This document shows, piece by piece, positions 17,647 through 54,677 of a DNA stretch of 64,000 bases. Position numbers and translations under genes: made by a program. The stretch lies in IMG/VR virus record IMGVR_UViG_3300032236_001850, positions 62,001 to 126,000 of that record. One strand, written 5' to 3'. Every line of letters begins with the position of its first letter. Position 1 is the first letter of the stretch. The notes under the pieces were generated by a model. That model made no database searches and was not told where the DNA came from. It saw only the letters and a list, made by a program, of their open reading frames with translations.

Positions 17647-19332
17647 ATGAATAAATTAAACGAAACTTTTAAAATCAACCCGCTTTACGAATCTGACGGG
17701 TACAAAGTTGGCCACAAAGCAATGTTGGCAGAAAACACTTCAGTTGAATATTGGACTTGGATCCCTAGAAGCATCAAGTACATGCACCCATCAATCGATG
17801 GTATCATGTCAGCAGGTGAACAGCTAGTTTGGAGATACATCCACAGCAACTTCCAGGAGTTATTCTTCAACAAACCAGTGGAAGCTGCAGAAAAATTCGG
17901 AAGAGACATGGCTGCATATCTTATGATGGATTACGACGCCGATCATTTTGTGGAACTTCATAAACTTGGATATCTTCCAGTTAGAATCAAAGCCATTCCT
18001 GAAGGGACATTTACAAAACCAAATATTCCACACATGACAGGAATCAACACAGTTGATGGTTATGCTTGGCTTGGACTTTACTTAGAAACTTTGGTTTCTA
18101 AGTTGGCTTGGCAATTACCAACTGCTGCTACCATCGCACACAGATTCAAACAGAATGCTGTTGAATGGGTTACCAAAACAGATCCAGAGAATCTTTGGTT
18201 AGCTGATTTCATGTGTCACGATTTCCACAGTAGAGGTGGTAACCCTTTCACCTCGATTGCAGTTGGTTTAGGACATGCCATGAGTAATTCAGGTAGCGAC
18301 ACATTAAATGTTATTCCAGCATCAAGATACTACTACGATTTTGATGAGAACGAGGTTCCTGTCTATAGTGTTAATGCTTCAGAGCACAGTGTGACATGCA
18401 CAGGTATTTTCTTCTACGAGAAAAAATTAAGAAGCGGTTTATTAAACCACGAAATTGTTTCTTACTACACAAGCACTGCACCTTCAGAGGGATCAGTTCA
18501 GGATCCTGACTATTTAGCAATTGCTGAATTACTTAATCTTCGTGATTGGTTGGAAAAATTTCCTAAAGGTATTCTTTCAGTTGTTTCTGACACGATGAAT
18601 CTATGGAAGGTGATCACTCACATCCTACCAAGACTTAAAAAAGAAATCCTTGCAAGAGATGGCAAATTGGTAATTAGACCTGACAGTGGAGACCCAGTTG
18701 ATATCATTTGTGGAACAACAACTATTAATAACAAGTGGGTAGAAGGAATACTTCCGCAATCTGAGTGTGAAAAGAAAGGTGTAATAGAACTTCTTTGGGA
18801 CATCTTTGGAGGTGAAGAAACTTCAACTGGATACAAAAGATTAGATTCTCACATTGGAGCAATCTACGGGGATTCAATCAACTTAGAAAGACAAATCGCT
18901 ATCTACACAAGATTAGCAGATAAAGGATTTTCAGCTACAAACATCGTGGTTGGTGTTGGTTCTTACACGTATGTTATGCTAACGAGAGACTCCGCTGGAT
19001 ATGCAGCTAAAGGAGCTTGGTTCGCTACTAAGGAATTTAACGGTGTTGATCCTGATGGTCAAACCGATTATATCACAACGGAGTATAACATCTACAAAGA
19101 TCCAGTAACTGATAACGGTACTAAAAAATCATTAAAAGGTTTCTGCCAGGTATTCAATAATAGACCAGATGCTTTACCTCACGAGATTAAGTACGACGGT
19201 AAGGATCAATTGGAAGTAAACACCGAATGCACTAAGGATCAAGAAGCTGGTGGTTTATTAAATATCATCTACGAAGATGGTAAATTCTATAATCAAGTCA
19301 CACTAACAGAGATTAGAGAAAGATTAAAATAA
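17647..19332 (+). CDS. nadV: nicotinamide phosphoribosyltransferase family (NAMPT or NARP1 Namat-like)
   Basis: SDGYKVGH, HDFHSRG, NASEHSVT, SVVSDT, LVIRPDSGDP, IYGDSI, KKSLKG. Confidence 0.93.
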   Translation: MNKLNETFKINPLYESDGYKVGHKAMLAENTSVEYWTWIPRSIKYMHPSIDGIMSAGEQLVWRYIHSNFQELFFNKPVEAAEKFGRDMAAYLMMDYDADHFVELHKLGYLPVRIKAIPEGTFTKPNIPHMTGINTVDGYAWLGLYLETLVSKLAWQLPTAATIAHRFKQNAVEWVTKTDPENLWLADFMCHDFHSRGGNPFTSIAVGLGHAMSNSGSDTLNVIPASRYYYDFDENEVPVYSVNASEHSVTCTGIFFYEKKLRSGLLNHEIVSYYTSTAPSEGSVQDPDYLAIAELLNLRDWLEKFPKGILSVVSDTMNLWKVITHILPRLKKEILARDGKLVIRPDSGDPVDIICGTTTINNKWVEGILPQSECEKKGVIELLWDIFGGEETSTGYKRLDSHIGAIYGDSINLERQIAIYTRLADKGFSATNIVVGVGSYTYVMLTRDSAGYAAKGAWFATKEFNGVDPDGQTDYITTEYNIYKDPVTDNGTKKSLKGFCQVFNNRPDALPHEIKYDGKDQLEVNTECTKDQEAGGLLNIIYEDGKFYNQVTLTEIRERLK

Positions 19333-21437: not shown

Positions 21438-23363
21438 ATGCACACACAAATTGCAAGTTTATTGGGCTATGCTTGGGTAATCATCCCAGTTTTAGCATTG
21501 CTATTCTACAAATTCACACTCCGAATGTTTTTCGGTATGGTGATAATCCCGGAGGACAAGATTGGTTTGGTTACCAAAAAATTCGTTCTTTTCGGTTCAA
21601 ATAAAAATTTACCAGACGGTAAAATCATTGCTCTAAATGGTGAACCTGGTTATCAAGCAGACACATTAGCACCTGGTTATTTAGGATGGGGTTATTGGCC
21701 TTGGCAGTACACAATCGATCAATCGCCATTCGTAGTAATCGCAAAAGGAAAAATTGGTTTAGTTACAGCAAGAGATGGTGCCCAGTTACCTACAGGTTCC
21801 ATTTTAGCAAGACACGTTGACTCTGATAACTATCAATCAGCCAGAGAATTCTTAGCAAATGGAGGACAACGTGGTAAACAAGTTGGTTATCTTAACAATG
21901 GGGTATATCGTATCAATAAACACTTATTCGAAGTGTATGAAGCTGATATCACTTATATTGAGGATGGACAAGTTGGTATCATCACTGCCCTAGACGGTAT
22001 TCCGTTGGATGCTGGAAACATTGCAGGTAACGTTATTGATGGTCACAACAATTTCCAAAATTTCGACAAGTTCTTAGAAAATGGAGGACAACGTGGTCTA
22101 CAAACACAAGTTGTACAAGCTGGTAACTATTCATTAAATCCATGGGCAGTGGAGGTTGAAAAAGTTGCAATGACACAGATTCCTATTGGACACGTTGGTG
22201 TTATTATCTCCTATGTTGGTGCAGAAGGTAAGGATGTAACTGGAGAAGGATTCAAACACGGTAATATCGTTGATAAAGGACAAAAAGGTGTTTGTATTAC
22301 ACCATTAGATCCAGGTAAATATGCGATCAATCCATATACACACAAAATTGAAGTTGTACCAACAACTAACTTAGTACTTAACTGGGCTAATGCTCGTACA
22401 GAGTCACACAATTTGGATAAAGGATTAAGCACAATCACAGTGCGTTCTAAAGACGGTTTCCCATTCAACTTGGACGTTTCTCAAATCATCCACATCCCAT
22501 CAACTGAAGCACCTAAGGTTATTGCTCGATTTGGAGCCATGCAAAACCTTGTATCTCAAGTACTTGAGCCTACAATCGGTAACTACTTCCGTAACTCAGC
22601 ACAAAATTCTGATGTTATCTCATTCTTAAATGATCGTCAAAAACGTCAAGATGCTGCTAAAAACGAAATCAAAAAAGTACTTGACGAGTATAATGTACAT
22701 GCAGTTGATACATTGATTGGAGACATCACACCTCCTGAGTCGTTAATGAAAACTCTTACTGACCGTAAGATTGCAGAAGAGGAGCAAACAACTTTCAACG
22801 TGCAACAAGCTGCACAAGAGCAAAAACAAAAATTGGCTTCTGCAAAAGCTTTAGCTGATATGCAAGGTGAAATCGTACAAGCTGAACAATCGGTAATGAT
22901 TGCCGATAGAAAGGCACAAACGAAGGTTAAGGAATCTGAAGGGGAGGCAACATCTATGAAACTTAAAGCAGCTGCACAAGCGGAAGCCAAAGAGATCATG
23001 GCAAAAGCGGATGCAACACAAATCAAATTAACCGGAGAAGCAGAAGCATCTAAGATTGAGGCGATTGGTAAAGCAACAGCGGAAGCTTACGAGAAACAGG
23101 TTAAAGCAATGGGAGCAGACAACTTCGGACAATTAAAAGTTGTTGAGTCGATTGGTATGAACAACATCAAAATCATTCCTGAGATTCTTATCAGCGGAGG
23201 TGATGGTGGTAACGGACCTATCTCAGGTTTACTTGGAATGGAGTTACTGAACCAGGTTAATGCTAGAAAAGCAGAAGCAGCAGCTCCTGCGGTAGTAAAA
23301 GAAACACCTGCCTCGTCAGGACCTTCAATAACACAAGAAGGACCTAAAAAAGGTAACAAATAA
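21438..23363 (+). CDS. SPFH/band 7/flotillin domain membrane protein
   Basis: N-terminal TM, repeated RG.Q...L..G.Y.IN modules, TITVRSKDGFPFNLDVSQI, Ala/Glu-rich flotillin coiled coil. Confidence 0.88.
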   Translation: MHTQIASLLGYAWVIIPVLALLFYKFTLRMFFGMVIIPEDKIGLVTKKFVLFGSNKNLPDGKIIALNGEPGYQADTLAPGYLGWGYWPWQYTIDQSPFVVIAKGKIGLVTARDGAQLPTGSILARHVDSDNYQSAREFLANGGQRGKQVGYLNNGVYRINKHLFEVYEADITYIEDGQVGIITALDGIPLDAGNIAGNVIDGHNNFQNFDKFLENGGQRGLQTQVVQAGNYSLNPWAVEVEKVAMTQIPIGHVGVIISYVGAEGKDVTGEGFKHGNIVDKGQKGVCITPLDPGKYAINPYTHKIEVVPTTNLVLNWANARTESHNLDKGLSTITVRSKDGFPFNLDVSQIIHIPSTEAPKVIARFGAMQNLVSQVLEPTIGNYFRNSAQNSDVISFLNDRQKRQDAAKNEIKKVLDEYNVHAVDTLIGDITPPESLMKTLTDRKIAEEEQTTFNVQQAAQEQKQKLASAKALADMQGEIVQAEQSVMIADRKAQTKVKESEGEATSMKLKAAAQAEAKEIMAKADATQIKLTGEAEASKIEAIGKATAEAYEKQVKAMGADNFGQLKVVESIGMNNIKIIPEILISGGDGGNGPISGLLGMELLNQVNARKAEAAAPAVVKETPASSGPSITQEGPKKGNK

Positions 23364-25288: not shown

Positions 25289-26182
25289 ATGAGTGAAATT
25301 AAAAAACACATATCTGTTGTAGAGACAGATAATGGACACGGAATTCTGAGTTATCTAACAATGGAAATGTCAGATAAATTAAGTCCGGAGGGATTTCCAG
25401 AGATGGGATTGAAAATGAAAACAAAACACGTCGAGCTTGAAACACATCAAGTAAAATCGGTAATCAATTCCGAACAGATGCAAGATCTCGAAGCAATGGG
25501 AATTAACACTTTGGATACGTTAAATTCAACACTACTGAACGAATCCGAAATGGGACAGGAGAAGCAAATTTATAAAAAAATGAAATTGCTTGGTTATGAA
25601 TCCAACAGAAAATTATGGACAAAGTTCCAAAATTTTGCACATAAATGGACGGGATATGTACCAATGTTAGATATCACAAAGGATGGAGCTTTATTAAGAA
25701 AGATGAATTTCATGTCACAGATCATAGCAACATCATCAAGACTTGGTCCTGCTAACTTTGTAATAATTGGTCCAGGTTTATTAGAACAGTTTGTTGCAGA
25801 TCCAGGATTTGTGCACGTTCAACATGATTCTTCATCAACTCCGGGTAAAATCTATTTATGTGGTACATACAGAGATCAGTTTCAAATATTAATAAATCCG
25901 GGACTTCCGTGGACGGATAAAAGAGTAGTTATGGGTAGGGACTCTTCGGTTCAAAATGAAGGCATATTTATGATTGAACACAAGGAAGGATATGTTTTTG
26001 ATAAAAGAGAATATGTGAATCCAACATTTCTTACTCCTATGATCGAAATGGTACTAAGAAAAAGATATGCTTTAACGCACACGCAAAACGCAGCAAAAAA
26101 TTACATAACATTAACATGTACTAATAAAAAACATAATGTTCTTACACACATTATTGAAAAGTACTTCAAAAAGAAAAAATAA
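25289..26182 (+). CDS. truncated T4 gp23/gp24-like capsid protein paralog
   Basis: EQMQDLEAMGI..LNSTLLNE, IATSSRLGPANFVIIGP, CGTYRDQFQILINP, VLRKRYAL parallel the gp23 motifs ELAQDL, RTRRGxGNxII, GxLxGxYxVYIDPY, FKTRYG. Confidence 0.7.
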   Translation: MSEIKKHISVVETDNGHGILSYLTMEMSDKLSPEGFPEMGLKMKTKHVELETHQVKSVINSEQMQDLEAMGINTLDTLNSTLLNESEMGQEKQIYKKMKLLGYESNRKLWTKFQNFAHKWTGYVPMLDITKDGALLRKMNFMSQIIATSSRLGPANFVIIGPGLLEQFVADPGFVHVQHDSSSTPGKIYLCGTYRDQFQILINPGLPWTDKRVVMGRDSSVQNEGIFMIEHKEGYVFDKREYVNPTFLTPMIEMVLRKRYALTHTQNAAKNYITLTCTNKKHNVLTHIIEKYFKKKK

Positions 26183-26649
26183 TGGTTAGTTTATATTCAT
26201 CAATCCTTTGGGATAAAATTGGTCACGATCCCAACGAATTTAAAATACACGAAAAGGAATTTCCGGAGATATTCGAAGAATTCAAAAAATACATAGAGGA
26301 TAAGGGATCAGAACAATTTCTCGATGACGTTAGGGGAATAGAGGGAATAGTTGGAGATATTACTGAATTTAGTTACTATGACGGTCCGATATACCAACAC
26401 AAAACACACACTCACGAAAGCAACATCAAAGATCCGGAGGATTGGGAAGAAGGTAAGAAAAACGGATACAAGGAGATAAAAATGATTTTCCATGAATCTG
26501 AAGTTCTTCCAAACGTTCTAAGGATGATGATGGAATTTCTTGGGCCCGACGAGGTTTCCTTTCTTGCTGATGTCCATAGGGAATACTATAAAAATAAGAA
26601 AGCAATAGCCGTTGAAGATTGTCAATTGAGGTCTAGCGATGAGCAATAG
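26182..26649 (+). CDS. hypothetical protein
   Basis: 155 aa ORF. Confidence 0.75.
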   Translation: MVSLYSSILWDKIGHDPNEFKIHEKEFPEIFEEFKKYIEDKGSEQFLDDVRGIEGIVGDITEFSYYDGPIYQHKTHTHESNIKDPEDWEEGKKNGYKEIKMIFHESEVLPNVLRMMMEFLGPDEVSFLADVHREYYKNKKAIAVEDCQLRSSDEQ

Positions 26650-37488: not shown

Positions 37489-37521
37489 TTTTTTTATTCA
37501 AAAAGGATTCCTTATATTTGC
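37489..37521 (+). promoter_or_regulatory. early/host-sigma promoter for the tRNA/ncRNA cluster
   Basis: TTTTTTTATTCAAA...TATATTTGC after terminator hairpin 37447-37477. Confidence 0.75.
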
Positions 37522-37544: not shown

Positions 37545-37613
37545 ATGGGAAAAGCAATAATAGGAATAATAGGAATAGCAGCAACTGTAATAGTGATGAT
37601 GCTAACCAAGTAA
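37545..37613 (+). CDS. 22 aa hydrophobic peptide (not in ORF track)
   Basis: MGKAIIGIIGIAATVIVMMLTK; A-rich leader. Confidence 0.45.
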   Translation: MGKAIIGIIGIAATVIVMMLTK

Positions 37614-37622
37614 ATTAAAAAA

Positions 37623-37699
37623 GGTCCTTAAACTTAATTGGCATGGCGCCAAACTGGCTTCTAAACCCAGCGTCTCCGGTTCGAGTCCGGTAGGGATCA
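37623..37699 (+). tRNA. tRNA, anticodon most consistent with CUA (amber suppressor); alternative reading is degenerate tRNA-Arg(UCU)
   Basis: Acceptor GGTCCTT/AGGGATC+A, T arm CCGG TTCGAGT CCGG, anticodon arm CTGGC TTCTAAA CCCAG (4 WC pairs + C.C); atypical D arm; no encoded CCA. Confidence 0.6.
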
Positions 37700-37713: not shown

Positions 37714-38046
37714 ATGAGAGAATTAACATGGACAACATATTACGGTGAGGTCAAAAGATTTTCAGAGATTGATCATCAACATCTATCAAACATTCTTTGG
37801 TTCAGAGAGATTCTAACAGGTGCAAATCTTTGTAACTGCGAAGTTCAAAGAGCATTAAATTCAGAATTGAAGAGATTTGGTGGTAAGCGATTACCTTGGA
37901 AACCATTACCAATTCCACAGGAAATAGAATGGATAAGAGGAGCTGCTTATATAAACCAAAAAGGTGAGATAATAGGAACAATGAAAACACCATCACATTA
38001 TGGTAAAGTTATTGGATCCGTTGCTCATATAGAAAAACTCAACTAG
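37714..38046 (+). CDS. hypothetical protein
   Basis: 110 aa ORF inside RNA cluster. Confidence 0.75.
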   Translation: MRELTWTTYYGEVKRFSEIDHQHLSNILWFREILTGANLCNCEVQRALNSELKRFGGKRLPWKPLPIPQEIEWIRGAAYINQKGEIIGTMKTPSHYGKVIGSVAHIEKLN

Positions 38047-38117
38047 CGGAGAGTAGGGGTAACCCAAAAATAGCTAAGCTGTGTTAAGCGACAGAACTGA
38101 TAATCTGTTAGAAGCTA

Positions 38118-38277
38118 GGTTGGATGGCGGAAAGCTTATAATGTGAGAAATCATGTTATAACGTGGCAGACGCTAGATTAGAGAAAGGACGCGATCGGGG
38201 TTGGAATACCGATAATGGCGAAAATGGAAGAACCAACGCTTTAATTACCATTGTGGGTTCGAATCCCACTTCAACCA
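38118..38277 (+). ncRNA. tRNA-shelled RNA A (160 nt) with D-loop and anticodon-arm insertions
   Basis: GGTTGGA/TTCAACC+A acceptor, GTGGG TTCGAAT CCCAC T arm, Leu-type GCGGAA...TGGCAGACGC D arm split by a GAAA hairpin. Confidence 0.75.
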
Positions 38278-38291
38278 CAAATCAACGATGT

Positions 38292-38368
38292 TAACTACCT
38301 GTGGTATCTACGGGGGCTAGGGAGAAACCTAGAAACTTACTTCGGTAAGTTAAGGAGCAAATGAGTTA
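38292..38368 (+). ncRNA. candidate multi-hairpin structured RNA
   Basis: TAACT/AGTTA closing stem enclosing CCTGTGG/CTACGGG, CTAGG GAGAAA CCTAG and AACTTAC TTCG GTAAGTT. Confidence 0.5.
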
Positions 38369-38519
38369 CAGTTCGGATTTAAACCTTAAAAAAGCTACTG
38401 CTTTAATGATATGTAGATTCAGAATAGCTTGTACTATTTAGGTACCTGAACCATTCAAAGAAGTTTTAGCAGATGATGATATTTTTTAGCTGCGGCGGAA
38501 ATTTTTTGATTCATCAAAC

Positions 38520-38611
38520 AGCCAGGTAGGCACAAGGTCGGTTCGAGTCCGATGGAAGGTCATGGATGACGGGTAGCACCCTGCATGGAGGTTCGATTCC
38601 TTCACTGGCTA
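38520..38611 (+). ncRNA. tRNA-like RNA B (92 nt) with two T-arm-like hairpins
   Basis: AGCCAG/CTGGCT+A acceptor, GGAGG TTCGATT CCTTC T arm, extra TCGG TTCGAGT CCGA; no canonical anticodon arm. Confidence 0.6.
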
Positions 38612-38612
38612 C

Positions 38613-38742: not shown

Positions 38743-39024
38743 GATCAGATGGCGGAATTGGTAGACGCACCCCAAAAAACAAAGCATCTGAGGGGCGGTT
38801 AAATAAGGAGGACGCAGACTCCGAATAATCCAGAACAGCAAGGACGTAAGATGAAATGACATCTTCAGCCTTGTGTCGGAAGTTGGGAATTAACCCGTGA
38901 TACCAGAATAACCGATGTTCCAAGGTAGGTTATTCTTTAGGTGTGAGATGAAGACCGTTAAGGTTGAGTGACACAAGGGATTGACAGGGTCCAAATCGTA
39001 CAGGTTCGAATCCTGTTCTGATCA
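38743..39024 (+). ncRNA. tRNA-shelled RNA C (282 nt): Leu-type shell with ~215 nt structured insert replacing the anticodon loop
   Basis: Perfect GATCAGA/TCTGATC+A acceptor, canonical GCGGAATTGGTAGACGC D arm, ACAGG TTCGAAT CCTGT T arm. Confidence 0.8.
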
Positions 39025-39038: not shown

Positions 39039-39185
39039 ATGACATTTGATGAATGGATTTATAAGGTTTGCTTACATATAAGCAACAGGACAAGAAAGGA
39101 GATTACTGATGTTTATTCATCAATTGATCTAACAGATGCAAAGCTAACATTTCTGGACGGGATTAATCCGGAAGAATATAATTGA
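39039..39185 (+). CDS. small hypothetical protein (48 aa, not in ORF track)
   Basis: MTFDEWIYKVCLHISNRTRKEI...EEYN. Confidence 0.5.
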   Translation: MTFDEWIYKVCLHISNRTRKEITDVYSSIDLTDAKLTFLDGINPEEYN

Positions 39186-39442
39186 GTATGATTGAGTACT
39201 ATGTAGGTATTGATCCTAAAGACAGAGAAAAGTTTGATTCTTATGTTGAATATCTGAATAATGATCAGCAATGCGACCCTAAATGTAAAATAGAGGTTCT
39301 GCATGAATTTGATGATCCTGACGGATACTATACATTTATGATTCAGGGTCATTGGGATTCATACACTAAATTTTTAGGAGAAACCGGATACGGTAGAGAA
39401 ACGGATGGATTTGTTAAATCAATCAATCACTACGAGGAATAG
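39182..39442 (+). CDS. hypothetical protein
   Basis: 86 aa ORF ending in TAG, in frame with next gene. Confidence 0.7.
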   Translation: MSMIEYYVGIDPKDREKFDSYVEYLNNDQQCDPKCKIEVLHEFDDPDGYYTFMIQGHWDSYTKFLGETGYGRETDGFVKSINHYEE

Positions 39443-39445
39443 ATT

Positions 39446-39772
39446 ATGAACGTTGACTTATTTAGACACTGGATTCCAGATCTAAGACTAACTCGGAATA
39501 AGAGTGCTTATGTTGCAAAACAGTGTCCAGTTTGTCCGCGTACACCGCATAGTAAATCATTTAGAATAAACACCAAACTTAAAGTTTGGAAATGTTATCA
39601 GTGTGGCAGAAGTGGTAAATCATTTAACAAAATGATACATTACTTAAAGAAGAGAGACACTAAAAGAAAGGAGTTACAATATTTGAAGAAAATAGGTCGT
39701 CGTCCAAAGTGTGTTCCTATTGACGTTCATTACGGGTGTGAAACGTACTATGAATCTACGTTACCGTTTTGA
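39446..39772 (+). CDS. stand-alone primase-type zinc finger (CHC2-like) protein
   Basis: CPVCP...SFRIN...VWKCYQCGRSG resembles the DnaG Zn-binding domain; no TOPRIM domain. Confidence 0.6.
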   Translation: MNVDLFRHWIPDLRLTRNKSAYVAKQCPVCPRTPHSKSFRINTKLKVWKCYQCGRSGKSFNKMIHYLKKRDTKRKELQYLKKIGRRPKCVPIDVHYGCETYYESTLPF

Positions 39773-39816: not shown

Positions 39817-39851
39817 AAATTTTTACAAAAAGTGAAACAAAAAAGAAAATT

Positions 39852-39861
39852 GAATATATAA
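39852..39861 (+). promoter_or_regulatory. putative late promoter (GAATATATAA)
   Basis: Same RATATATA motif found before structural genes; 18 nt before ATG 39880. Confidence 0.55.
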
Positions 39862-39879
39862 TAATAAATTAAGAACACA

Positions 39880-40233
39880 ATGACTTAGATTAACAAATTT
39901 CAAGAAACAAAACTGGTAGTAATCACCAGAGCTGATATTCATCCAGGGTATCAAATTGTCCAGAGCACACATTCGCTCGCAGATTTTGCACACGAACATC
40001 CTACAAAGTTCAAAGAATGGAAAGAGACAACAAATTCTATAATTTGTCTCTCCGCAAAATCAGAATCTCATTTAATTAAACTTTACGAAAAATTAAGACA
40101 CGTCACAGAGGCATCATTATTTTTTGAGCCTGATGTTGACGCATATACTTCTGCGTGCTTTTTTGGCACTCCGCAGGTTAGGAAATCATTGTCCAACCTT
40201 TCGTTATCTCTAAAAAATCTACAAACATCATGA
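39880..40233 (+). CDS. pth2: peptidyl-tRNA hydrolase type 2-like protein with in-frame TAG at codon 3 (not in ORF track)
   Basis: ATG ACT TAG ATT AAC..., then open: KLVVITRADIHPGYQIVQSTHSLADF...EWKETTNSIICL...FEPDVDAYTSAC; no other in-frame ATG or GTG. Confidence 0.75.
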
Positions 40234-40640
40234 AAGGAATTCTAAAAGTTAGAAACATTGACTCTATTAAAAAGCTGAGTCTTAAAAGGGCCATCGGTAA
40301 ACAGAAAGGCCTATGGTTTAGAATGATGAAGATCAGAACCACAATTCTATTTCTTGAAGAGCACAACATGCTCAAAATTCAACAGCTGTGGGATATACTG
40401 GAAGTTTATCTGAATTACCAAATCGAATATTCTAAATTGCAGTATCTGATCTACATTAGAAAAAGAGGCTCCTGGAGTAATTATTCTACACTATCACAGG
40501 AAACTATGGAAGAGTATATTAAAAAGATCGCCGTTAATTCCCATAGAATGACCAGCAATCTTCCATACGAAATCTATTACAAGTACAGGGTATCTATAGG
40601 TGAAATGGAAAGGAAAATAAATGAAAATAAAGGCATTTAA
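40230..40640 (+). CDS. hypothetical protein
   Basis: 136 aa; ATGA overlap with the Pth2-like stop supports translation of the upstream frame. Confidence 0.7.
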   Translation: MKGILKVRNIDSIKKLSLKRAIGKQKGLWFRMMKIRTTILFLEEHNMLKIQQLWDILEVYLNYQIEYSKLQYLIYIRKRGSWSNYSTLSQETMEEYIKKIAVNSHRMTSNLPYEIYYKYRVSIGEMERKINENKGI

Positions 40641-40750: not shown

Positions 40751-41056
40751 ATGAAAACAAAAGAACAAAACAGACAAGATGTAGTGAACTACTTAAGAAC
40801 AACTTCTAAACATGCATTCTTTAGAGGTGAAAAGGGAATCTTCAAAATCGAGGAGATTGAGGAAGGTGTATTTAATGAGATGGTTGGTGGGATCCAATCC
40901 AAGACAAACATCAACATCAATTGGTTTGTTGATAATTACGGTAACGATGCAAAGAACGTTATCAGAAAAAGAATATTCTATGATGGACATGGTTACAAAT
41001 CCATCAAGATGAAGTATTACAACAAATTGAATGAAACAAAAAAGGTGCTTATTTAA
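40751..41056 (+). CDS. hypothetical protein
   Basis: 101 aa ORF. Confidence 0.75.
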   Translation: MKTKEQNRQDVVNYLRTTSKHAFFRGEKGIFKIEEIEEGVFNEMVGGIQSKTNININWFVDNYGNDAKNVIRKRIFYDGHGYKSIKMKYYNKLNETKKVLI

Positions 41057-42303: not shown

Positions 42304-42336
42304 TTTTTTTATATCGAAAACATTTCATATATTTGC
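42304..42336 (+). promoter_or_regulatory. early/host-sigma promoter
   Basis: TTTTTTTATATCGAAAACATTTCATATATTTGC. Confidence 0.8.
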
Positions 42337-42359
42337 TTTGTAATTTAAAATTAATACTT

Positions 42360-43088
42360 ATGGAATTAAAAAGAAATCCTAAAGCTCCTTCTAATAACAG
42401 AAGCTGGTCAACAATGGACGATTCAACATTAATCAAAATGGCAAGAGGTGGTGCTTCGGCTGCAGAGATTGCAAAAATCTTAGGAAGAACTGTTATGGCG
42501 GTAACTACAAGAAAACACAATCTTCATGTTGATGTTCGTTTAACATCATCTAAAGGTAAAGGTGTGGATGCACCAAAATCAGTTTCTGTTAGAAATAGAA
42601 ACAAGAAAAAAGAATTGCCAGTTAGAGTTATTTCAAGAACTGCTGCACCACAACCCGTTAATGTTGTTTCAGCGGGAATCACAAAGGTAACAAAACCAGT
42701 TTGGACTAAAGAGGAAGACGCTAAACTTTTATCTTTGGCTGCTGAGGGTAAATCAGCAAAGGAGATTGGAAAGATTCTAGGAAGAACATCAGTTGCTGTA
42801 ACTGTTAGAAAATACGGATTGAATAAATCTCAAGAGTTAACTAACAAAAAAGCAAACGTAAAAGTTGACAACAAAGCCGACGAGAAAAGATCTGCAATGT
42901 TGGCGAGAATGGAAAAAATGAGAGCTGCTAAGGGTAAAAATAAAAAATTACCAGTAGTGGAAGAAGCTGCTTCGGTTCCAGCTACCAAAATGGAAAAAAT
43001 TGTTTCTTCAGCTGAAAGCGATTTTGATGCTCTTTCAAGAATTGCTAAAAGTACAGGAGCTACAATCACAGTGGTTTTTGGAAAATAG
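42360..43088 (+). CDS. basic DNA-binding protein with two Myb/SANT-like HTH repeats
   Basis: WSTMDD...AEIAKILGRT..AV..RK and WTKEED...KEIGKILGRT..AV..RK; start ATG 42360 lies downstream of the promoter. Confidence 0.75.
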   Translation: MELKRNPKAPSNNRSWSTMDDSTLIKMARGGASAAEIAKILGRTVMAVTTRKHNLHVDVRLTSSKGKGVDAPKSVSVRNRNKKKELPVRVISRTAAPQPVNVVSAGITKVTKPVWTKEEDAKLLSLAAEGKSAKEIGKILGRTSVAVTVRKYGLNKSQELTNKKANVKVDNKADEKRSAMLARMEKMRAAKGKNKKLPVVEEAASVPATKMEKIVSSAESDFDALSRIAKSTGATITVVFGK

Positions 43089-45473: not shown

Positions 45474-48400
45474 GTGTCAAATCCATTAAATCTTACAGGA
45501 CAGTTTATAGCCGACACATACGGAAGATTATTACAGGTACAAGGTAATAATGTCTATGACGGCGAGGGTAACTATTTATATACAATTGGAGGAACTGGTG
45601 GAGGTACAGTTGGACCGCAAGGGCCTACTGGAGCAACAGGTTCACCAGGATCCAACGGAGCTACAGGTTCACAGGGAGCAACAGGAGCTAACGGTTCGAC
45701 TGGACCACAAGGAGCAACAGGTTCACAGGGAGCAACAGGAGCTAACGGTTCGACTGGACCACAAGGAGCAACTGGAACTAGCGGTGCTACGGGAGCTACG
45801 GGTAGAACAGGTGCTACGGGAGCTACAGGTTCAACGGGAGCTAATGGTGCTACGGGAGCTACAGGTTCACAAGGTGTTATGGGCTCAACTGGAGCAACGG
45901 GTATAACAGGTACAGACGGATCCAATAGTGGAAAATGGATATTATCAACATCATCAAGCCCATCACCAGGTACCTTCTTTACAAATTCCACAAATACCGG
46001 TGACACCTCACAGATAATAATCAGCAATCTAGCGGACAATCTGACAAACTATTATGGCTGGAATCAAGCTGCTTCGGCTGCAACTGCATTGGGTAATCCC
46101 CTTTATTTGCAGATTTCCGAAGTTGGTAATGCTACAGTCAGCGGAATTTACCAAATAACAGCGGTGAATGATAATACAGGGTCATACTCTTATGTTGTTT
46201 TATCCATATTATCGGCGGGAGGATTATTTACAATAGGAAAAGAATATACAATATCATGGGTATATTCGGGTAAGAATGGGGTGGATGGATTCCAAATAGT
46301 AAATATTGAAAACAATGAGGAATTAGTTCATCTTATAAATACTAGTCATCTTTTAAGTGGATGCTATTATAACATAAAAAGTGTGGATTTTAACTTGGAT
46401 TACAGATTCGATTCAAAATCATACACAAACATTCTTTTGCTTGCATTAGCTAATAATAAAATAGCGGAGGATGGATATGGTATATTCTACACACCCAAAT
46501 ATGATCAGTTCCCAATATTTTCATCCAATATTGCTTATAGTGTTGGAGATAGAGTCATATGGGGAGGCTACGTATGGACGTGCACGGTGTCAACATCACC
46601 AGTGACTGCACCGAGTCCATTTGAACTTAATCCAGATTATTGGACAACAGGATATTACAAGGACAATACAAATTTCTATAATGTTTCATTGGATTCCATA
46701 AAATATGACTATATAAACGATAGAATAATTTATAGAGAGGAAAAAAATACAAATATTGTTAGCACTAATAATGAAAATATATTATATTGGGAAAGCTTAT
46801 TTGGAACATATAACTCTCCTATAAACGGCGACATAAAGTTCTACAATCCCATAAAATCATTCCAATGGGGTAACGTCTACGATGGCCAATATGGTATAGG
46901 TAACCAGTACATTGAAAATTCATACAATGAAAATATAAATTTTAGTGGCGATTATCAAACTAATATAAAATTTACAAATCTATCATATCAAAGATTTTAT
47001 AGTATATCGAATGATACTTCATCAATCTTTGTTGGTGGTGGATTTTCATCCTATACAAATCCAAGTTCATTGATTACAGAGGCTCACGGATTAATCGAAA
47101 TAACACCAACATATTACACTGATCAAATTTTTGATCAAGGATATGGATTTGATAATGGTTCGATGACCTCAGTAATACAGAAAGACCAAAAAATAATAAT
47201 TGGCGGTGACTTTACAACTTACACTAACGGGACAACTTACACAGTTAATCGTATAATAAGATTGAATCAATGGGGTTCTATTGACACAACTTTCGCTACA
47301 GGAGGCGGTTTCAATAGTGCTGTTTTTGCTTTAGCTTTACAGGAAGATGGTAAAATTTTAGTTGGTGGAAGTTTTGATGCTTACGATGGAAGTTCTGCTA
47401 AATATATAGCCAGATTAAACCCCGATGGACAATTGGACAACTTTAATCTGGGGGAATTTGGATTTGATAACGATACCTATGTTAGCTGTTTAGCGGTACA
47501 ACCAGATGGAAAGATTTTAGTTGGTGGAGGTTTCAATTCATACAACAGTAACACAGCAATAAAAATAGTAAGGTTAAATCCCGATGGAACTTACGATAAC
47601 ACATTTTTAACCGGTGATGGATTTAACGGTGATGTTAAATCAATAGTTATCCAGAAGGACGGAAAGATTTTAGTTGGGGGTCAATTTGACGCATTCAATG
47701 GTGACTCTGCAAATTACATAGCTAGGCTAAATCCTGACGGATCCAACGATGGCACCATAGGAACAACCGGATTTAATGGTGGTGTTAATTGTATAACTTT
47801 ACAAAGGGATGGTAAAATTTTAGTTGGTGGTCAATTCAGTCAATATGATTCGAATACAATCAGTAACATAGTGAGACTAGAAAGTTCTGGAGCATATGAT
47901 CCAACATTTGCTTATCTGGCGGAAAATCAGGGCGAAGTTAACGTGATAGTGGTGAATGATAACACCATAATCGCAGGAGGTAAGACTGAAAATTTCAATC
48001 TAATAAAATTTGATTTGCTTGGGAATGATCTCTATTACTATCCAATAGATAATGGAGTTAGTACAATACAGATAGTACAAAAAACATACCAATCAAATCT
48101 AACTTTCGATAACGGATCGCATCAGGACAGCGTAAGATTAAGATCAGGATCACAAGACACGATCAATCTAACAGATGGATCTTACCAGGATATGATTGGT
48201 CTTAATTTTTCTTATCAATCAAAATTAAATCTCAGAAATTCAAATCAAAATATTAAATTTCTAAACAGAGTTTATCAGAATGAGATTGAGCTAAAAAATT
48301 CCAACCAGATACTCAATTTAGCATTCGGAAGCTACCAAATTAATTTGGATTTATACAATTCCGAACAGCTTATTCCCGAACAAATTGAAAACGTTATTCA

Positions 48401-50993
48401 GGAGAATATAAGCATAAAGAATTACAACTATGATAGGACAGTTCATCCAATAACTGGTTCGGAGTATAATCAATCATTCATGAATGATCTGGAGGTGAAC
48501 AATTCAGCTCCTAAATTAATAGCTATCTCGAATAATAAATTATATGAACTTGAGGTTAGTTCGATTAGTGGAGGTACTGGTGCAACACCAACAATTAATC
48601 AGGTATTAGGAGCAGGCGAATATGCAACGGATAAAAATATGGTGCTAAATACGTCGACAGATGCATTTAATACGTATCTTACACCAGGTCAGGTTGCAGT
48701 AAATAATGGTGTTGAGAGTATAAGAATGACTCCATCAGCCATCTCATTTTCAACACCATCCGGAGGCTCATCATTTTTAAAACCAAGTCTAACACAACCA
48801 TCTGCATTTTCTCCTACGTTTTACTTACCTGAAAAAGCAAGCACGTCAAACTATACGTTAGCTACCACTGCTGATTACAATCTACAAGCTGTAACAGCCA
48901 ATGCCAACACAACAAATCTAGATATACAATTTCAGCCAGTTACCAATACAGGTGCAACTGGTACCAAATTTGTAACGATACAAAACACTGGTATTTTTCT
49001 ATTGGGTACCAACCAGACAACTACAAATGTTTTCAACGATAGAATAGAATGGTCTCAATATGGAAATACCATTACTCTAGGAGCAACTACTGCAGCTGCT
49101 TCCAATAGTGCTAATTACATATTCCCAATAAAACCATTCTCAGGAACTCCCTATACATTAGCAACAACTGCTGATACCATTTCAGTATCTTCAGGTAACA
49201 CTAACAATCTACAAATTTCCTCAATAGGGACAAACAGAGTATTTTATTCAAAAGGTCTAGTATCCTCAAATGGGTCAGTTACAGTGGGAACTACAGGAAC
49301 TACAGGAGGTACATCATGGGCATGGGATCTTAAGGTAAACGGTGTGACTGGTGCTACTGGCTCCAATGGAGCAACAGGAGCTACAGGATCTAACGGTTCT
49401 AATGGAGCAACGGGAGCAACTGGATCACAAGGTATCCAAGGTGTTACTGGAGCAACGGGAGCAACTGGATCACAAGGTATCCAAGGTGTTACTGGAGCTA
49501 CAGGATCTAATGGAGCAACAGGTTCTGCCGGAGCTACTGGAGCAACGGGATCACAAGGTATTCAAGGGGTTACTGGAGCTACAGGGGCTACAGGAGCAAA
49601 TTCAACAGTTCCTGGACCAACAGGAGCAACTGGTGCAACAGGATCACAAGGTATCCAAGGGGTTACTGGAGCAACTGGAAATAGCATCTCAGCAAGTTTC
49701 ATGAGAGGATCTAGATCCGCCATGCAAACTCTGAATCTAACACCTAATAGTTTAGTTGCATTCACACAAATAGATCTTTCAACAGGTTCGGATATTTCTT
49801 TGAACGCGTCAACCGGTCAGATAACACTAGCAGCTAATAGAGTTTATAGAATACTCGGACAAGTTCCAAATGGTATAGCAAGTGGTTCCAATATAAGACC
49901 ATCGTTCTCCTGGTATAATGAAACAGCAGGTACCTGGATAGGAAGCCAATCGGCAATCTATCAACCTTCAGACGCTGCGGGATATTGGTCATCAGGAGGT
50001 CCATCTGATGCACTATTATCAACCAGCACATCAACTGTTATATCATATAGAATTCTTTCAGCAAGTGGTAGTATAACCGGTCTTGGAGCTAATACAGATT
50101 TTGGTCTTACTGGTTCATATCCATGGTTTGATATACAAGTAATATCTGGAAATTCACCACTTCTAAATGGAGCTACAGGAGCAACCGGTGCAACGGGAGC
50201 CAGTATAACTGGACCAACTGGTGCAACGGGAGCCACTGGATCTGTTGGAGCAACAGGACCAACTGGTGCTACTTTCAATACAGTTCCTGCTATCAACTGG
50301 GGTACTAACACTTTTACTAAATCTGGTTCAGGTAATGGTGATCAATTGCTTGATAATGGAACTAACGATACACCGGGAGTTCTTTTATATTACGGAAATA
50401 ACTCAAACTATGGTATTGATAGTTATAATGGTTCTTACAATGTTTTAAGCGGTCAGTTATTGAGATTTGTTACTAATCTAAATGAAGCTGGTGGTGCTAT
50501 AAAAGCTGCATTCGATACATCGGGTAATTTAGCTCTTAGTGGATTTATAAATCCGAGCTCGTGGCGAGCTGGACAGACAATACAGACGAAATTATTTAGT
50601 GCTAGCGATTTAGGATTTACAACAAACTATACCAACAGTACGAACACTTATACCTCCATAGTTACCGGTACTTATACCCCTCTGTCCTCATCCTCGTACA
50701 TTTTCTTTGAAGTTTATGCAATGTATGATGTTGGTGGTGCCGCTGCCGACTCATTCTTCTCCCAAATAACATGGAATGGTGGGGAAATTGGGGTTCAACG
50801 TCAAGTTTGGGCTAACGGTGCGGGTGGTGGTACACGTAGTGGTACATTATTTCCATTGGCTGGTAGAGTAACGAACTCCTCCACGACTGGTTATGGATGG
50901 GCAGTTAATACCAGAAGAGATTCTTCCGATGATGGTATTACTGTATATCCTAACGGTGGATTCTATGTGAAAATAACAGAAATCGCTAGATAA
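45474..50993 (+). CDS. giant fibre/adhesin: Gly-Ala-Thr collagen-like tracts, delta-60-type beta-propeller repeats, C-terminal tip domain
   Basis: 1839 aa; (GAT)n; repeated [12 protein letters not shown]...[14 protein letters not shown] near 47020-48000; GTG start. Confidence 0.85.
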
Positions 50994-51022
50994 TCAACAT
51001 AATCTCCCAAACTATGCGTAAC

Positions 51023-51031
51023 GATATATAG
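51023..51031 (+). promoter_or_regulatory. putative late promoter GATATATAG
   Basis: 19 nt before start of 51051 gene; same motif before 60799. Confidence 0.6.
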
Positions 51032-51050
51032 ATAAAATTAAAGTTACGAT

Positions 51051-54676
<3,626 letters not shown>

Positions 54677-54677
<1 letters not shown>

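What the first reader, a model, noticed from the sequence alone, without database searches (positions are those of the whole stretch)
37623..37699. Candidate amber-suppressor tRNA (CUA) 2.2 kb upstream of the amber-interrupted pth2
Seen: in CTGGC-TTCTAAA-CCCAG, centring the loop on CTA gives four Watson-Crick pairs, U33, purine 37 and A38, with one C31.C39 mismatch. Centring on TCT (Arg) leaves essentially no stem. The acceptor stem looks Arg-like, so this may be a tRNA-Arg(UCU) that shifted register. The genome is not globally TAG-recoded, so a suppressor would act on selected codons, and the pth2 codon 3 is an obvious client. The atypical D arm makes function uncertain.
Basis: partly seen in the sequence, partly recalled or inferred. 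Interest (0 to 1): 0.8.

Follow-up and report, generated by a model that had tools for sequence, protein, structure and literature searches.

The report
Phage amber-suppressor tRNA gating a PTH2 gene
The flagged 77 bases are a real but oddly shaped tRNA gene that reads the stop codon UAG, and across dozens of large phages (one of them cultured) it travels with a peptidyl-tRNA hydrolase gene that always carries a UAG within its first five codons, so the enzyme can probably be made only when this tRNA is working.

Summary
Window 37623-37699 (+) is a genuine, selected tRNA gene with anticodon CUA. ARAGORN at default settings and Rfam at its gathering score miss it because its shape is unusual: 8-bp acceptor plus 4-bp T stem, a 7-nt connector ending UUAA, a 5-bp D-like hairpin, and a 4-bp anticodon stem with a C.C mismatch. 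Sixteen distinct homologs keep this fold (98.5% of cells paired; 19 of 21 pairs with compensatory changes) and an invariant YUCUAAM loop. Some relatives are canonical CUA tRNAs.

The PTH2-like gene 2.2 kb downstream begins ATG ACT TAG ATT and has no usable canonical start after the TAG. An early TAG (codon 3-5) opens this gene in 42 contigs with 27-55% GC, including cultured Tenacibaculum phage pT24. A CUA tRNA lies upstream on the same strand in 29 of them; 11 of the other 13 have under 3.2 kb of upstream sequence on the contig. TAG is a normal terminator elsewhere in the window (14 of 80 ORFs), and no other client was found.

Best reading: a dedicated suppressor tRNA paired with a programmed amber codon that gates PTH2 synthesis. 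Expression, charging, the inserted amino acid and the physiological purpose are untested.

The parts
37623..37699 (+). tRNA(CUA) gene with a non-canonical 8/4 cloverleaf; discriminator A at 37699; no encoded CCA (followed by CAAAAAAC)
37623..37630 (+). 5' strand of the 8-bp acceptor stem (GGTCCTTA); pairs with 37691-37698 (TAGGGATC)
   Evidence: The eighth pair (A8-U65) covaries as A-U, C-G, G-C and G.U across homologs
37631..37637 (+). 7-nt connector AACTTAA between acceptor and D hairpin; canonical tRNAs have 2 nt; the terminal TTAA is invariant in the family
   Evidence: Alignments A2 and A6; 2-nt canonical connector per PMC7609411
37638..37652 (+). D-like hairpin TTGGC-ATGGC-GCCAA (5 bp, 5-nt loop containing the conserved GG)
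   Evidence: All 5 modelled pairs show double compensatory changes
37654..37670 (+). Anticodon arm: 4-bp stem CTGG/CCAG, C.C at the 31.39 position (37658, 37666), loop TTCTAAA (37659-37665), anticodon CTA at 37661-37663
   Evidence: All 4 stem pairs covary; loop YTCTAAM is invariant; L134 and L140 have a full 5-bp stem, which fixes the register
37676..37690 (+). T arm: 4-bp stem CCGG/CCGG, loop TTCGAGT
39834..39862 (+). Conserved gene-specific upstream element GAAAC-N15-ATATATAAT (promoter-like), 17 nt before the ATG; it occurs once in the window
39880..39888 (+). ATG ACT TAG: start codon, one sense codon, then the programmed amber codon (39886-39888)
39889..40233 (+). Rest of the PTH2-like ORF (114 codons from ATT 39889, then TGA 40231-40233); the first ATG/GTG/TTG after the TAG is 100 codons in
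40230..40640 (+). Downstream 136-aa ORF whose ATG overlaps the PTH2-like stop (ATGA), so probably translationally coupled; function unknown
40751..41056 (+). 101-aa ORF of unknown function, conserved next to the PTH2-like gene in 7 of 11 representative loci

Best explanation
The element is a functional phage tRNA gene with anticodon CUA. It belongs to a family of phage amber-suppressor tRNAs that is genetically linked to a PTH2-family peptidyl-tRNA hydrolase gene. In this lineage the tRNA has been remodelled into an 8/4 cloverleaf with a long connector and a shifted D hairpin. The proposed mechanism is as follows. The tRNA is transcribed and processed, CCA is added, and it is aminoacylated by a host or phage synthetase. 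Ribosomes start on the short-leader PTH2 mRNA at AUG, translate one codon and meet UAG. Either RF1 releases a dipeptide (or the dipeptidyl-tRNA drops off), or the CUA tRNA inserts an amino acid and full-length PTH2 is made. PTH2 output therefore depends on, and is tuned by, the charged suppressor. The very early position of the UAG is where release-factor termination is slowest, so a weak or scarce suppressor can win there while leaving the phage's ordinary TAG terminators largely unaffected. Shown here: conserved tRNA fold and anticodon, conserved early TAG, lack of alternative starts, and physical linkage. Inferred: expression, charging, decoding, the inserted amino acid and the physiological purpose.
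For: (1) Fold under selection. 98.4-98.5% of cells are paired; 17 of 21 and 19 of 21 pairs have compensatory double changes; slid controls give 30-49%. RNAalifold predicts the same structure. The YUCUAAM loop, the D-loop GG, the GUUCRA T loop and G1-C72 are invariant, and A73 is present in 15 of 16. (2) Continuity with ordinary suppressor tRNAs. L134 and L140 have a 5-bp anticodon stem and 7-nt loop and are called tRNA(cta) by default ARAGORN. L152, L157, L158, L161, L163 and the annotated tRNA-Sup of phage pT24 are canonical 7/5 CUA tRNAs in the same genomic position. (3) The TAG is conserved while everything around it drifts. 42 contigs carry it. The codons between ATG and TAG vary (ACT, AAT, AAC, AAA, TTG, ATG, AAAAAG, AAAAACTTG). 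Protein identity falls to about 34% and GC ranges from 27% to 55%. A single base change would remove the TAG, so it is under purifying selection. (4) No alternative start. In L128, L133, L138, L144 and L148 the whole ORF contains no ATG, GTG or TTG; in the window the first one is 100 of 114 codons in. (5) Linkage. The tRNA is always upstream on the same strand, 24 to about 3430 nt away. It was found in 29 of the 42 contigs, and 11 of the other 13 have under 3.2 kb of upstream sequence. (6) Specificity. The PTH2-like genes are the only conserved early-TAG ORFs in about 241 kb; the TAA and TGA control scans give only unconserved noise. (7) Background. Termination rate falls and peptidyl-tRNA drop-off rises as a minigene shortens from 8 to 2 codons (PMC2490762).
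Against: There is no experimental evidence of expression, processing, charging or decoding. The D region departs from every characterised functional tRNA (6-8-nt connector), and the Rfam score is below the gathering score. The codon after the TAG is ATT in 20 of 20 close relatives, although ATT is only 38% of Ile codons inside these ORFs. This nucleotide-level constraint would also fit a non-canonical AUU start. L162 has a tRNA(CUA) next to a TAG-less PTH2-like gene. Huge phages LR756502 and LR756504 have the TAG but no CUA tRNA within 5 kb on either side. An efficient suppressor would also read through the 14 TAG-terminated genes in the window; evidence for compensating backup stops is weak (p = 0.018 in the window, not replicated). 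The window protein itself is just under Pfam's PTH2 cutoff (22.0 against 23 bits), and the lysines of the Pth2 GKGK motif are replaced.
Confidence: 0.7

Rival explanations
1. The UAG is a true terminator of a 1-4-codon leader mini-ORF (a bar-like minigene). PTH2 is made by termination-reinitiation or by non-canonical initiation at the next codon (AUU). The linked CUA tRNA has other clients or another role.
For: The codon after the TAG is ATT in 20 of 20 close relatives, despite 38% ATT usage and free synonymous variation at internal conserved Ile columns. A 2-codon ORF at the head of a peptidyl-tRNA hydrolase gene recalls minigenes that generate Pth substrates (PMC2490762). L162 keeps the tRNA without a TAG. 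LR756502 and LR756504 have the TAG but no tRNA within 5 kb on either side.
Against: The following codon is ACT in L152, CTT in L161 and ATA in pT24, none of which is a usable start. The short or absent leader in several lineages favours initiation at the 5'-proximal AUG. This reading leaves unexplained the tight same-strand linkage to a tRNA whose anticodon exactly matches the conserved stop codon.
Confidence: 0.12
2. The RNA is tRNA-shaped but is not a decoding tRNA. It could be a regulatory, decoy or substrate RNA, for example one bound or processed by the PTH2-like enzyme, or a decoy for host tRNA-targeting defences. The CUA loop would be conserved for a reason other than translation.
For: The D region is unlike that of any proven functional tRNA, and the Rfam score is below the gathering score. 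The same island holds a family of tRNA-Leu-like genes with no anticodon arm at all. The tRNA-PTH2 linkage persists in L162 without a TAG.
Against: The anticodon loop keeps every decoding hallmark (Y32, U33, A37). The acceptor plus T helix is exactly 12 bp, as EF-Tu requires (PMC5389517). The GG and TTC elbow motifs are kept. Canonical CUA tRNAs occupy the same position in sister lineages. Engineered 8/4 tRNAs with CUA anticodons suppress amber codons efficiently in E. coli (PMC5389517).
Confidence: 0.1
3. The phage uses genetic code 15 (TAG read as Gln genome-wide or in late genes), and this is its general suppressor tRNA. The PTH2 TAG would be just one of many.
For: Public pipelines translated several homologs with Q at the TAG, so they chose code 15 for those contigs. 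Phage TAG-to-Gln recoding with CUA tRNAs is well documented (preprint 10.1101/2021.08.26.457843).
Against: In the window TAG terminates 14 of 80 ORFs, including 9 of the 43 that are 150 aa or longer. Standard-code coding density is 87%. The large virion-like genes at 45-61 kb have no in-frame TAG. No other early-TAG ORF was found in about 241 kb. Only 64 kb of a 434-kb genome was examined.
Confidence: 0.04
4. The element is a tRNA pseudogene, an attachment-site remnant or a chance match; or it is a tRNA-Arg(UCU) read in a shifted register.
For: Default ARAGORN finds nothing. The single-sequence fold is not better than shuffles (z = -1.08).
Against: There is massive compensatory covariation in all four helices. 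The CUA loop is invariant from 27% to 55% GC genomes. Canonical members have an unambiguous 7-nt loop. Acceptor sequences are not conserved, so there is no Arg-like signature.
Confidence: 0.02

Closest known systems
Phage-encoded amber suppressor tRNAs of TAG-recoded (code 15) phages such as crAss-like, Lak and other gut phages (Borges et al., preprint 10.1101/2021.08.26.457843; Peters et al., PMC9523058)
   Same: A phage-encoded tRNA with a CUA anticodon, in a phage whose host presumably uses the standard code. Suppressor-dependent expression of phage genes is used as a regulatory layer. Those authors predicted that some such tRNAs would be too non-canonical to detect.
   Different: Here there is no genome-wide or late-gene recoding. 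TAG is a normal terminator (14 of 80 ORFs), and the only client found is one codon in one gene, placed within the first five codons, with the tRNA physically linked to that gene.
(8/4) tRNAs and allo-tRNAs (Mukai et al. 2017, PMC5389517)
   Same: An 8-bp acceptor plus 4-bp T stem gives the standard 12-bp branch. The D stem is long with a small loop. Such tRNAs occur in phages, and 8/4 scaffolds given CUA anticodons suppress amber codons in E. coli.
   Different: The variable region is short (5-6 nt) rather than a long V-arm. There is a 6-8-nt connector ending UUAA between acceptor and D stem, which is not reported for any class in the review PMC7609411. The natural anticodon is CUA. The described phage 8/4 species are Ser and His tRNAs.
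tRNA-Pyl
   Same: CUA anticodon, a compact D hairpin and G1-C72. ARAGORN labels any CUA tRNA 'Pyl'.
   Different: tRNA-Pyl has a connector of 0-1 nt, a 6-bp anticodon stem and a 3-nt variable loop, and it lacks G18G19 and T-Psi-C (PMC7609411). This tRNA has a 7-nt connector, a 4-5-bp anticodon stem and a 5-6-nt variable loop, and it keeps GG and TTC. I looked for no PylRS gene.
Lambda bar and other toxic minigenes (AUG-NNN-stop), with Pth (PMC2490762)
   Same: A two-codon ORF followed by a stop, tied functionally to peptidyl-tRNA hydrolase. The very early stop is where termination is slowest and drop-off highest.
   Different: Here the stop is followed in frame by the hydrolase ORF itself and is paired with a cognate suppressor tRNA. 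The leader length varies (TAG at codon 3-5) across the family.
PTH2 genes of jumbo phages (Iyer et al. 2021, PMC7824862)
   Same: The client gene is an archaeo-eukaryotic-type PTH2 in a very large phage, sitting among tRNA genes. It has been proposed to help ribosome rescue and tRNA recycling.
   Different: That survey mentions neither an in-frame TAG nor a suppressor tRNA. The cluster-C mycobacteriophage homolog examined here (Myrna) has a normal SD-positioned start and no CUA tRNA nearby.

Membership tests
Canonical elongator tRNA (Rfam RF00005 / ARAGORN) | Reaches the curated detection threshold | tested here: not met
   RF00005 gives 23.6 bits against a gathering score of 29. ARAGORN at default finds nothing and calls it only at -ps80.
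Canonical elongator tRNA (Rfam RF00005 / ARAGORN) | 12-bp acceptor plus T-stem branch | tested here: met
   8 + 4 bp; every pair is supported, and the 8:65 pair covaries.
Canonical elongator tRNA (Rfam RF00005 / ARAGORN) | 7-nt anticodon loop with U33 and purine 37, closed by a 5-bp stem | tested here: inconclusive
   Loop UUCUAAA has U33 and A37. In the window the 31.39 position is C.C, so the stem is 4 bp. L134 (G-C) and L140 (A-U) close it properly.
Canonical elongator tRNA (Rfam RF00005 / ARAGORN) | 2-nt connector, 3-5-bp D stem, D loop with G18G19; T loop T-Psi-C | tested here: not met
   The connector is 7 nt (6-8 in the family). GG in the D loop and GTTCRA in the T loop are present.
(8/4) tRNAs / allo-tRNAs (PMC5389517) | 8-bp acceptor stem with 4-bp T stem | tested here: met
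   the eighth pair is seen as A-U, C-G, G-C and G.U.
(8/4) tRNAs / allo-tRNAs (PMC5389517) | Long variable arm (allo-tRNA, SerRS-type) | tested here: not met
   The variable region is 5-6 nt in all 16 members.
tRNA-Pyl | 6-bp anticodon stem, 3-nt variable loop, 0-1-nt connector, no G18G19 or T-Psi-C | tested here: not met
   All four differ.
tRNA-Pyl | Cognate PylRS and pyl genes in the genome | not tested
   Only selected window ORFs were scanned; none was PylRS.
Suppressor tRNA of a code-15 phage | CUA anticodon | tested here: met
Suppressor tRNA of a code-15 phage | Many in-frame TAGs in phage genes; TAG avoided as a terminator | tested here: not met
   14 of 80 ORFs end in TAG; only one ORF has an internal TAG.
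Functional amber suppressor tRNA (any origin) | Transcribed, processed, CCA-ended, aminoacylated, and decodes UAG | not testable with these tools
   Needs tRNA-seq, acid gels, a reporter assay or mass spectrometry.
PTH2 (Pfam PF01981), the client gene | Reaches Pfam's gathering score | tested here: inconclusive
   The window protein scores 22.0 against 23 bits. Homologs L133, L137 and L140 score 27.7, 24.2 and 30.4 bits. The profile hits the solved Pth2 structure 2zv3 at E = 5.5e-5. The best fold-search hit is 2zv3 (probability 0.95, TM 0.44) from a pLDDT-68 model.
PTH2 (Pfam PF01981), the client gene | Catalytic residues and hydrolase activity | not tested
   The lysines of the GKGK motif align to P and Y. 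The catalytic set was not mapped.
bar-type minigene | Stand-alone AUG-NNN-stop ORF that causes peptidyl-tRNA drop-off | tested here: inconclusive
   The form is present in the window (ATG ACT TAG). The leader length varies in relatives and the stop is in frame with a long ORF. Drop-off cannot be tested here.

The most novel reading that the evidence does not exclude
The tRNA(CUA)/early-UAG pair is a natural, self-contained genetic lock with position-specific suppression. The remodelled 8/4, long-connector tRNA would be a deliberately weak or specialised decoder that beats RF1 only on ribosomes carrying a di- to tetrapeptidyl-tRNA. PTH2 would then be produced as a read-out of the balance between suppressor charging and RF1 activity in the infected cell, while the phage's own TAG terminators are spared. 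The remodelled body might also make the tRNA orthogonal to host enzymes or to host tRNA-targeting defences.
Probability: 0.2. Interest if true: 0.9.

Novelty: new variant of a known kind. Interest (0 to 1): 0.78.

Why it matters
Phage suppressor tRNAs are currently discussed as agents of genome-wide or late-gene code change. This case shows a different use: one tRNA, one codon, one gene. It is conserved across dozens of lineages of large phages, from 27% to 55% GC, and it locks a translation-quality-control enzyme (PTH2) to the presence of the suppressor.

It adds a cloverleaf variant, 8/4 with a 6-8-nt connector, to the short list of natural non-canonical tRNAs. That variant is invisible to the two standard tools tried here at their default thresholds.

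It exposes systematic annotation errors:
- PTH2 starts are called downstream of the TAG, as in pT24 BPT24_235 and GCA_040384025.1.
- The TAG is silently translated as Q under code 15.

Because the module is present in the cultured Tenacibaculum phage pT24, which has an annotated tRNA-Sup, the hypothesis can be tested directly. The tRNA could also be of interest as a naturally evolved scaffold for genetic-code engineering.

Tried and rejected
- **"TAG aligns with a conserved glutamine" (withdrawn).** Database homologs show Q-I at residues 2-5. The DNA shows that the Q is a TAG translated under code 15.
- **Quadruplet decoding (UAGA or NUAG) by an expanded 9-nt loop (rejected).** The PTH2 frame is in triplet register with both ATG and TAG. 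The base before the TAG is not conserved. The alternative frames have no start.
- **Downstream canonical start (rejected).** Several ORFs contain no ATG, GTG or TTG at all.
- **A second client at the TAG-ATT junction 39440-39445 (rejected).** Read-through would fuse ORFs 39182-39442 and 39446-39772, but the 86-aa partner is not conserved next to the Zn-ribbon gene in relatives.
- **Backup stops after TAG-terminated genes as a footprint of suppression (inconclusive).** 8/13 against 14/57 in the window (p = 0.018), but p = 0.39 in other module-carrying lineages.
- **Amino-acid identity from similarity to annotated tRNAs (no answer).** The canonical L152 copy is closest to phage tRNA-Asn, Gly and Pro genes. 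The window copy has no significant match. Acceptor-stem identity elements are not conserved.
- **Group I intron, ribozyme or other Rfam family in the neighbouring RNA island (no hit).** Nothing at E up to 10.
- **Covariation in the conserved 75-nt and 240-nt blocks (uninformative).** The sequences are too invariant.
- **Near relatives in GenBank phages by DNA (almost nothing).** One weak hit. Relatives came from IMG/VR and metagenomes instead.
- **Structure model of the PTH2-like protein (weak support only).** pLDDT 68, so the fold match to 2zv3 is only supportive.
Full report
**1. The observation.** The flagged sequence is as described.
- Window 37623-37699 (+) reads GGTCCTTA-AACTTAA-TTGGCATGGCGCCAA-A-CTGG-C-TTCTAAA-C-CCAG-CGTCT-CCGG-TTCGAGT-CCGG-TAGGGATC-A.
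- The anticodon is CTA at 37661-37663, with U33, A37, A38 and a C.C mismatch at the 31.39 position.
- Standard detectors do not accept it. ARAGORN finds no tRNA in the 64-kb window. Rfam finds nothing at gathering thresholds.
- On a local scan the tRNA model RF00005 gives 23.6 bits against a gathering score of 29. ARAGORN reports it only when its threshold is lowered to 80%, and then with a nearly unpaired D arm.
- The single-sequence fold is no better than shuffled sequence (z = -1.08). On the window alone the element would be doubtful.

**2. Provenance and relatives.** The window is part of IMGVR_UViG_3300032236_001850, a 434.5-kb phage contig. It has 37% GC and 87% coding density under the standard code. 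Relatives were obtained through flanking proteins and through the Pth2-like protein, from IMG/VR, JGI metagenomes, GTDB genomes, an exhaustive profile search followed by contig look-ups, and GenBank phages.

**3. The element is a selected, tRNA-shaped RNA.**
- Six distinct homologs aligned by MAFFT (A2) support one structure: an 8-bp acceptor stem, a 7-nt connector, a 5-bp D-like hairpin, a 4-bp anticodon stem and a 4-bp T stem.
- In A2, 98.4% of cells are paired and 17 of 21 pairs have changes on both sides. Controls with the 3' partners slid by one to three columns give 30-49% paired. RNAalifold predicts the same fold without guidance.
- A covariance model (R1) recovered 16 distinct members. 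Across these, 98.5% of cells are paired, 19 of 21 pairs have double changes, and the covariation score is 0.97 against 0.18 or less in slid controls. That alignment is fitted to the model, but it agrees with the MAFFT result.
- The eighth acceptor pair covaries (A-U, C-G, G-C, G.U), so the acceptor/T configuration is 8/4, summing to the standard 12 bp.
- Invariant or nearly invariant features are the UUAA at the end of the connector, GG in the D loop, the loop YUCUAAM, GUUCRA in the T loop, G1-C72 and A73.
- The 31.39 position is usually mismatched (C.A, C.C or A.C) but is G-C in L134 and A-U in L140. This fixes a 7-nt loop with CUA as the anticodon.
- Default ARAGORN calls L134 and L140 as CUA tRNAs.
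- In sister lineages the same genomic position holds fully canonical 7/5 tRNA(CUA) genes: L152, L157, L158, L161, L163 and the annotated tRNA-Sup of Tenacibaculum phage pT24.
- The window's tRNA is therefore a remodelled member of a family of ordinary-looking phage amber-suppressor tRNAs. It is not a pseudogene, and it is not a register-shifted tRNA-Arg.

**4. The client gene.**
- At 39880 the + strand reads ATG ACT TAG ATT AAC AAA TTT CAA GAA ACA AAA CTG GTA GTA ATC ACC AGA. It continues open for 114 codons after the TAG, to TGA at 40231.
- The post-TAG product is a divergent PTH2-family protein. The window copy scores 22.0 bits against Pfam's cutoff of 23, and homologs score 24-30 bits.
- A 13-sequence profile hits the solved Methanocaldococcus Pth2 structure 2zv3 at E = 5.5e-5. 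A medium-confidence model (pLDDT 68) has 2zv3 as its best fold match.
- No ATG, GTG or TTG follows the TAG until codon 100 of 114 in the window. In L128, L133, L138, L144 and L148 there is none in the entire ORF.

**5. The early TAG is conserved far beyond what drift allows.**
- All ten IMG/VR contigs with the gene start ATG-NNN-TAG-ATT.
- So do all 19 metagenome contigs whose 5' end is present, with codon 2 being ACT, AAT, AAC, AAA, TTG or ATG.
- Two mis-binned MAG contigs do the same; L152 has ACT after the TAG.
- The exhaustive profile search found 355 cluster representatives at E up to 1e-10. Many appeared to have normal N-termini with a conserved Q-I.
- The DNA shows that this Q is a TAG translated by the source pipelines under code 15. 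Examples are ATG AAA AAG TAG ATT, and ATG AAA AAC TTG TAG ATT.
- Several apparently TAG-less calls are mis-called downstream starts. L158 (55% GC) has ATG ACG TAG ATT ten codons upstream of, and in frame with, the annotated GTG. L161 has SD-ATG CTG TAG CTT. L163 has ATG AAT AAG TAG ATG.
- GenBank huge phages LR756502 (ATG AAA AAT TAG ATT) and LR756504 (ATG ACA TAG ATT) have it too. So does the cultured jumbo phage pT24 (ATG AAA TAG ATA), where the deposited CDS BPT24_235 was started at a downstream ATG.
- In total 42 contigs carry an early TAG, at codon 3 to 5.
- In a bacterial chromosome (L159) the TAG sits at codon 6 of a 259-aa ORF. That ORF follows a CUA tRNA-like gene and overlaps the start of a TAG-less PTH2-like gene.
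- Genuinely TAG-less relatives exist: L160, L162, L165 and mycobacteriophage Myrna.

**6. Linkage and specificity.**
- A CUA tRNA lies upstream on the same strand, 24 to about 3430 nt from the ATG, in 29 of the 42 TAG-bearing contigs.
- Of the 13 without one, 11 have less than 3.2 kb of upstream sequence on the contig. The other two are 10-kb windows taken from genomes over 630 kb.
- Among the four TAG-less loci only L162 has a CUA tRNA. It sits inside an 11-tRNA cluster.
- In the window TAG is an ordinary terminator, ending 14 of 80 ORFs.
- A scan for open frames with an ATG, an early stop and no nearby canonical start covered about 241 kb of window plus related loci. It found only the PTH2-like genes for TAG, and only unconserved noise for TAA and TGA.

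**7. How it most likely works.**
- I infer a dedicated suppressor-client pair. Ribosomes start at the AUG, and the conserved promoter-like element GAAAC-N15-ATATATAAT lies only 3-20 nt upstream, implying a very short leader or none.
- After one to three codons the ribosome meets UAG. It either terminates or drops off, or it is carried through by the charged CUA tRNA.
- The minigene literature shows that as an ORF shortens from 8 to 2 codons, release-factor termination slows and peptidyl-tRNA drop-off rises (PMC2490762). An early UAG is therefore the site where a suppressor competes best. This could explain how the phage tolerates TAG terminators elsewhere.
- A single mutation could remove the TAG and free the gene from the tRNA. 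Its retention across dozens of lineages argues that the dependence itself is selected, as a timing, dosage or sensing device.
- The inserted amino acid is unknown. No acceptor-stem identity element is conserved, and similarity searches are uninformative.
- From my own knowledge of E. coli identity rules, U35 plus A73 would favour Lys, and C34-U35 would favour Gln. This is a lead only.

**8. The main rival, and why I rank it lower.**
- The codon after the TAG is ATT in 20 of 20 close relatives. ATT is only 38% of Ile codons inside these ORFs, and conserved internal Ile columns vary freely. That is a nucleotide-level constraint.
- It could mean an AUU start following a leader mini-ORF, or a 3' context that favours suppression.
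- Against an AUU start, the codon is ACT in L152, CTT in L161 and ATA in pT24. The rival also leaves the linked, anticodon-matched tRNA unexplained.
- I cannot exclude the rival without protein N-terminal data.

**9. Comparison with what is known.**
- Phage suppressor tRNAs and stop-codon recoding are established. Borges et al. anticipated that some would be too non-canonical to detect.
- 8/4 tRNAs, including phage ones, and their competence in amber suppression are established (PMC5389517).
- PTH2 genes in jumbo phages are known and have been proposed to aid ribosome rescue (PMC7824862).
- I found no description of an amber-interrupted phage PTH2 gene, of its linkage to a suppressor tRNA, or of a tRNA with a 6-8-nt acceptor-D connector.
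- I classify this as a new variant of a known kind.

**10. Limits.**
- Everything functional is inferred from comparative sequence analysis.
- Only 64 kb of the 434-kb genome and roughly 10-kb pieces of relatives were examined.
- The co-occurrence table is censored by contig ends.
- The covariation statistics rest on 16 related sequences.
- The protein's catalytic competence was not assessed.

Noticed in passing
window 38118-38277, 38743-39024, possibly 38520-38612; also L131:3992/4533/4839/5137, L123:3314/3990/4265/4473, L132:808/1283/1622, L136:5075-5145: A multi-copy family of tRNA-Leu-like genes lies between the CUA tRNA and the PTH2-like gene. The acceptor (AGTCAGG/CCTGACT plus A73), the Leu-type D arm (TGGCGGAATTGGTAGACGC) and the T arm are nearly identical. 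In place of the anticodon and variable arms there is a hypervariable middle of 21-232 nt. The shortest copy (71 nt) has no anticodon stem at all. Default ARAGORN misses them all, there is no Rfam intron or ribozyme hit, and the function is unknown.
   Followed up: partly
window 38044-38118 and 38280-38517: Two non-coding blocks of about 75 nt and about 240 nt are 92-97% identical in the four closest lineages. That is better conserved than the flanking proteins (84-86% aa). The 75-nt block always directly precedes a tRNA-Leu-like gene. There is too little variation for a covariation test and no Rfam match.
   Followed up: partly
window 37545-37613 (+), with TATATTTG at 37513-37520: A 22-codon hydrophobic mini-ORF (MGKAIIGIIGIAATVIVMMLTK) lies just upstream of the CUA tRNA. 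It is conserved in L004 but absent in L003. It is preceded by a Bacteroidota-type TAnnTTTG -7 box, which hints at a Bacteroidota host; this is consistent with pT24 infecting Tenacibaculum.
   Followed up: no
L132:1942-3168: A second copy of the PTH2 5' end (ATG AAT TAG ATT plus 25 codons) is fused to a 380-aa homing-endonuclease-like protein (DUF4379 zinc-finger repeats plus DUF2726). Its frame runs into the ATG ACT TAG of the intact PTH2-like gene. This looks like a mobile-element insertion that duplicated the amber-containing leader.
   Followed up: partly
L159:4110-5354 (bacterial chromosome CP177134.1): A variant module in a cellular genome: a CUA tRNA-like gene, then SD-ATG ACA CTT ACA ACT TAG ATG opening a 259-aa ORF of unknown function, whose end overlaps the start of a TAG-less PTH2-like gene.
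   Followed up: partly
L166 (Tenacibaculum phage pT24, LC168164.1, record 194083-195036); L158 (GCA_040384025.1); proteins P0001, P0002, P0029: Annotation artefacts. Deposited CDS starts are placed downstream of the TAG (pT24 BPT24_235; the L158 gene). Several public protein sets translate the TAG as Q under code 15, which creates a false conserved 'Q-I' N-terminal motif.
   Followed up: yes
L166:2905-2983 and 3272-3350 (pT24 'tRNA-Undet'): Two near-identical tRNA-like genes have normal acceptor, D and T arms. Their anticodon arm appears to be replaced by a long stem with a tiny loop (TTCGCGGGTATATTACCCTCGAA). They are another kind of non-decoding tRNA look-alike, sitting beside the suppressor tRNA.
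   Followed up: no
L160:4913-4993: Directly upstream of a TAG-less PTH2-like gene lies a degenerate tRNA-like element. Its best anticodon-arm hairpin (CAAGT-CTCATAA-GCTTG) presents CAU rather than CUA. No tool called it.
   Followed up: no
window-wide TAG-terminated ORFs (e.g. 4316-5164, 14205-14780, 26182-26649, 42333-43088): 8 of 13 TAG-terminated genes have a second in-frame stop within two codons, against 14 of 57 for TAA and TGA (p = 0.018). This could be a footprint of living with a suppressor, but it was not replicated in other lineages (p = 0.39).
   Followed up: yes
window 39440-39448: ORF 39182-39442 ends TAG ATT and is in frame with the next ORF (39446-39772, CHC2 zinc-ribbon protein). 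Read-through would fuse them. The 86-aa partner is not conserved beside the zinc-ribbon gene in relatives, so this is probably coincidental.
   Followed up: yes
window 17647-19332; 45474-54677: Context genes include a NAPRTase-family NAD-salvage enzyme, an M42 aminopeptidase (11140-12213), an SPFH/Band-7 protein (21438-23363), and two giant collagen-repeat proteins of 1839 and 1208 aa, the larger with DUF5122 beta-propeller repeats.
   Followed up: no
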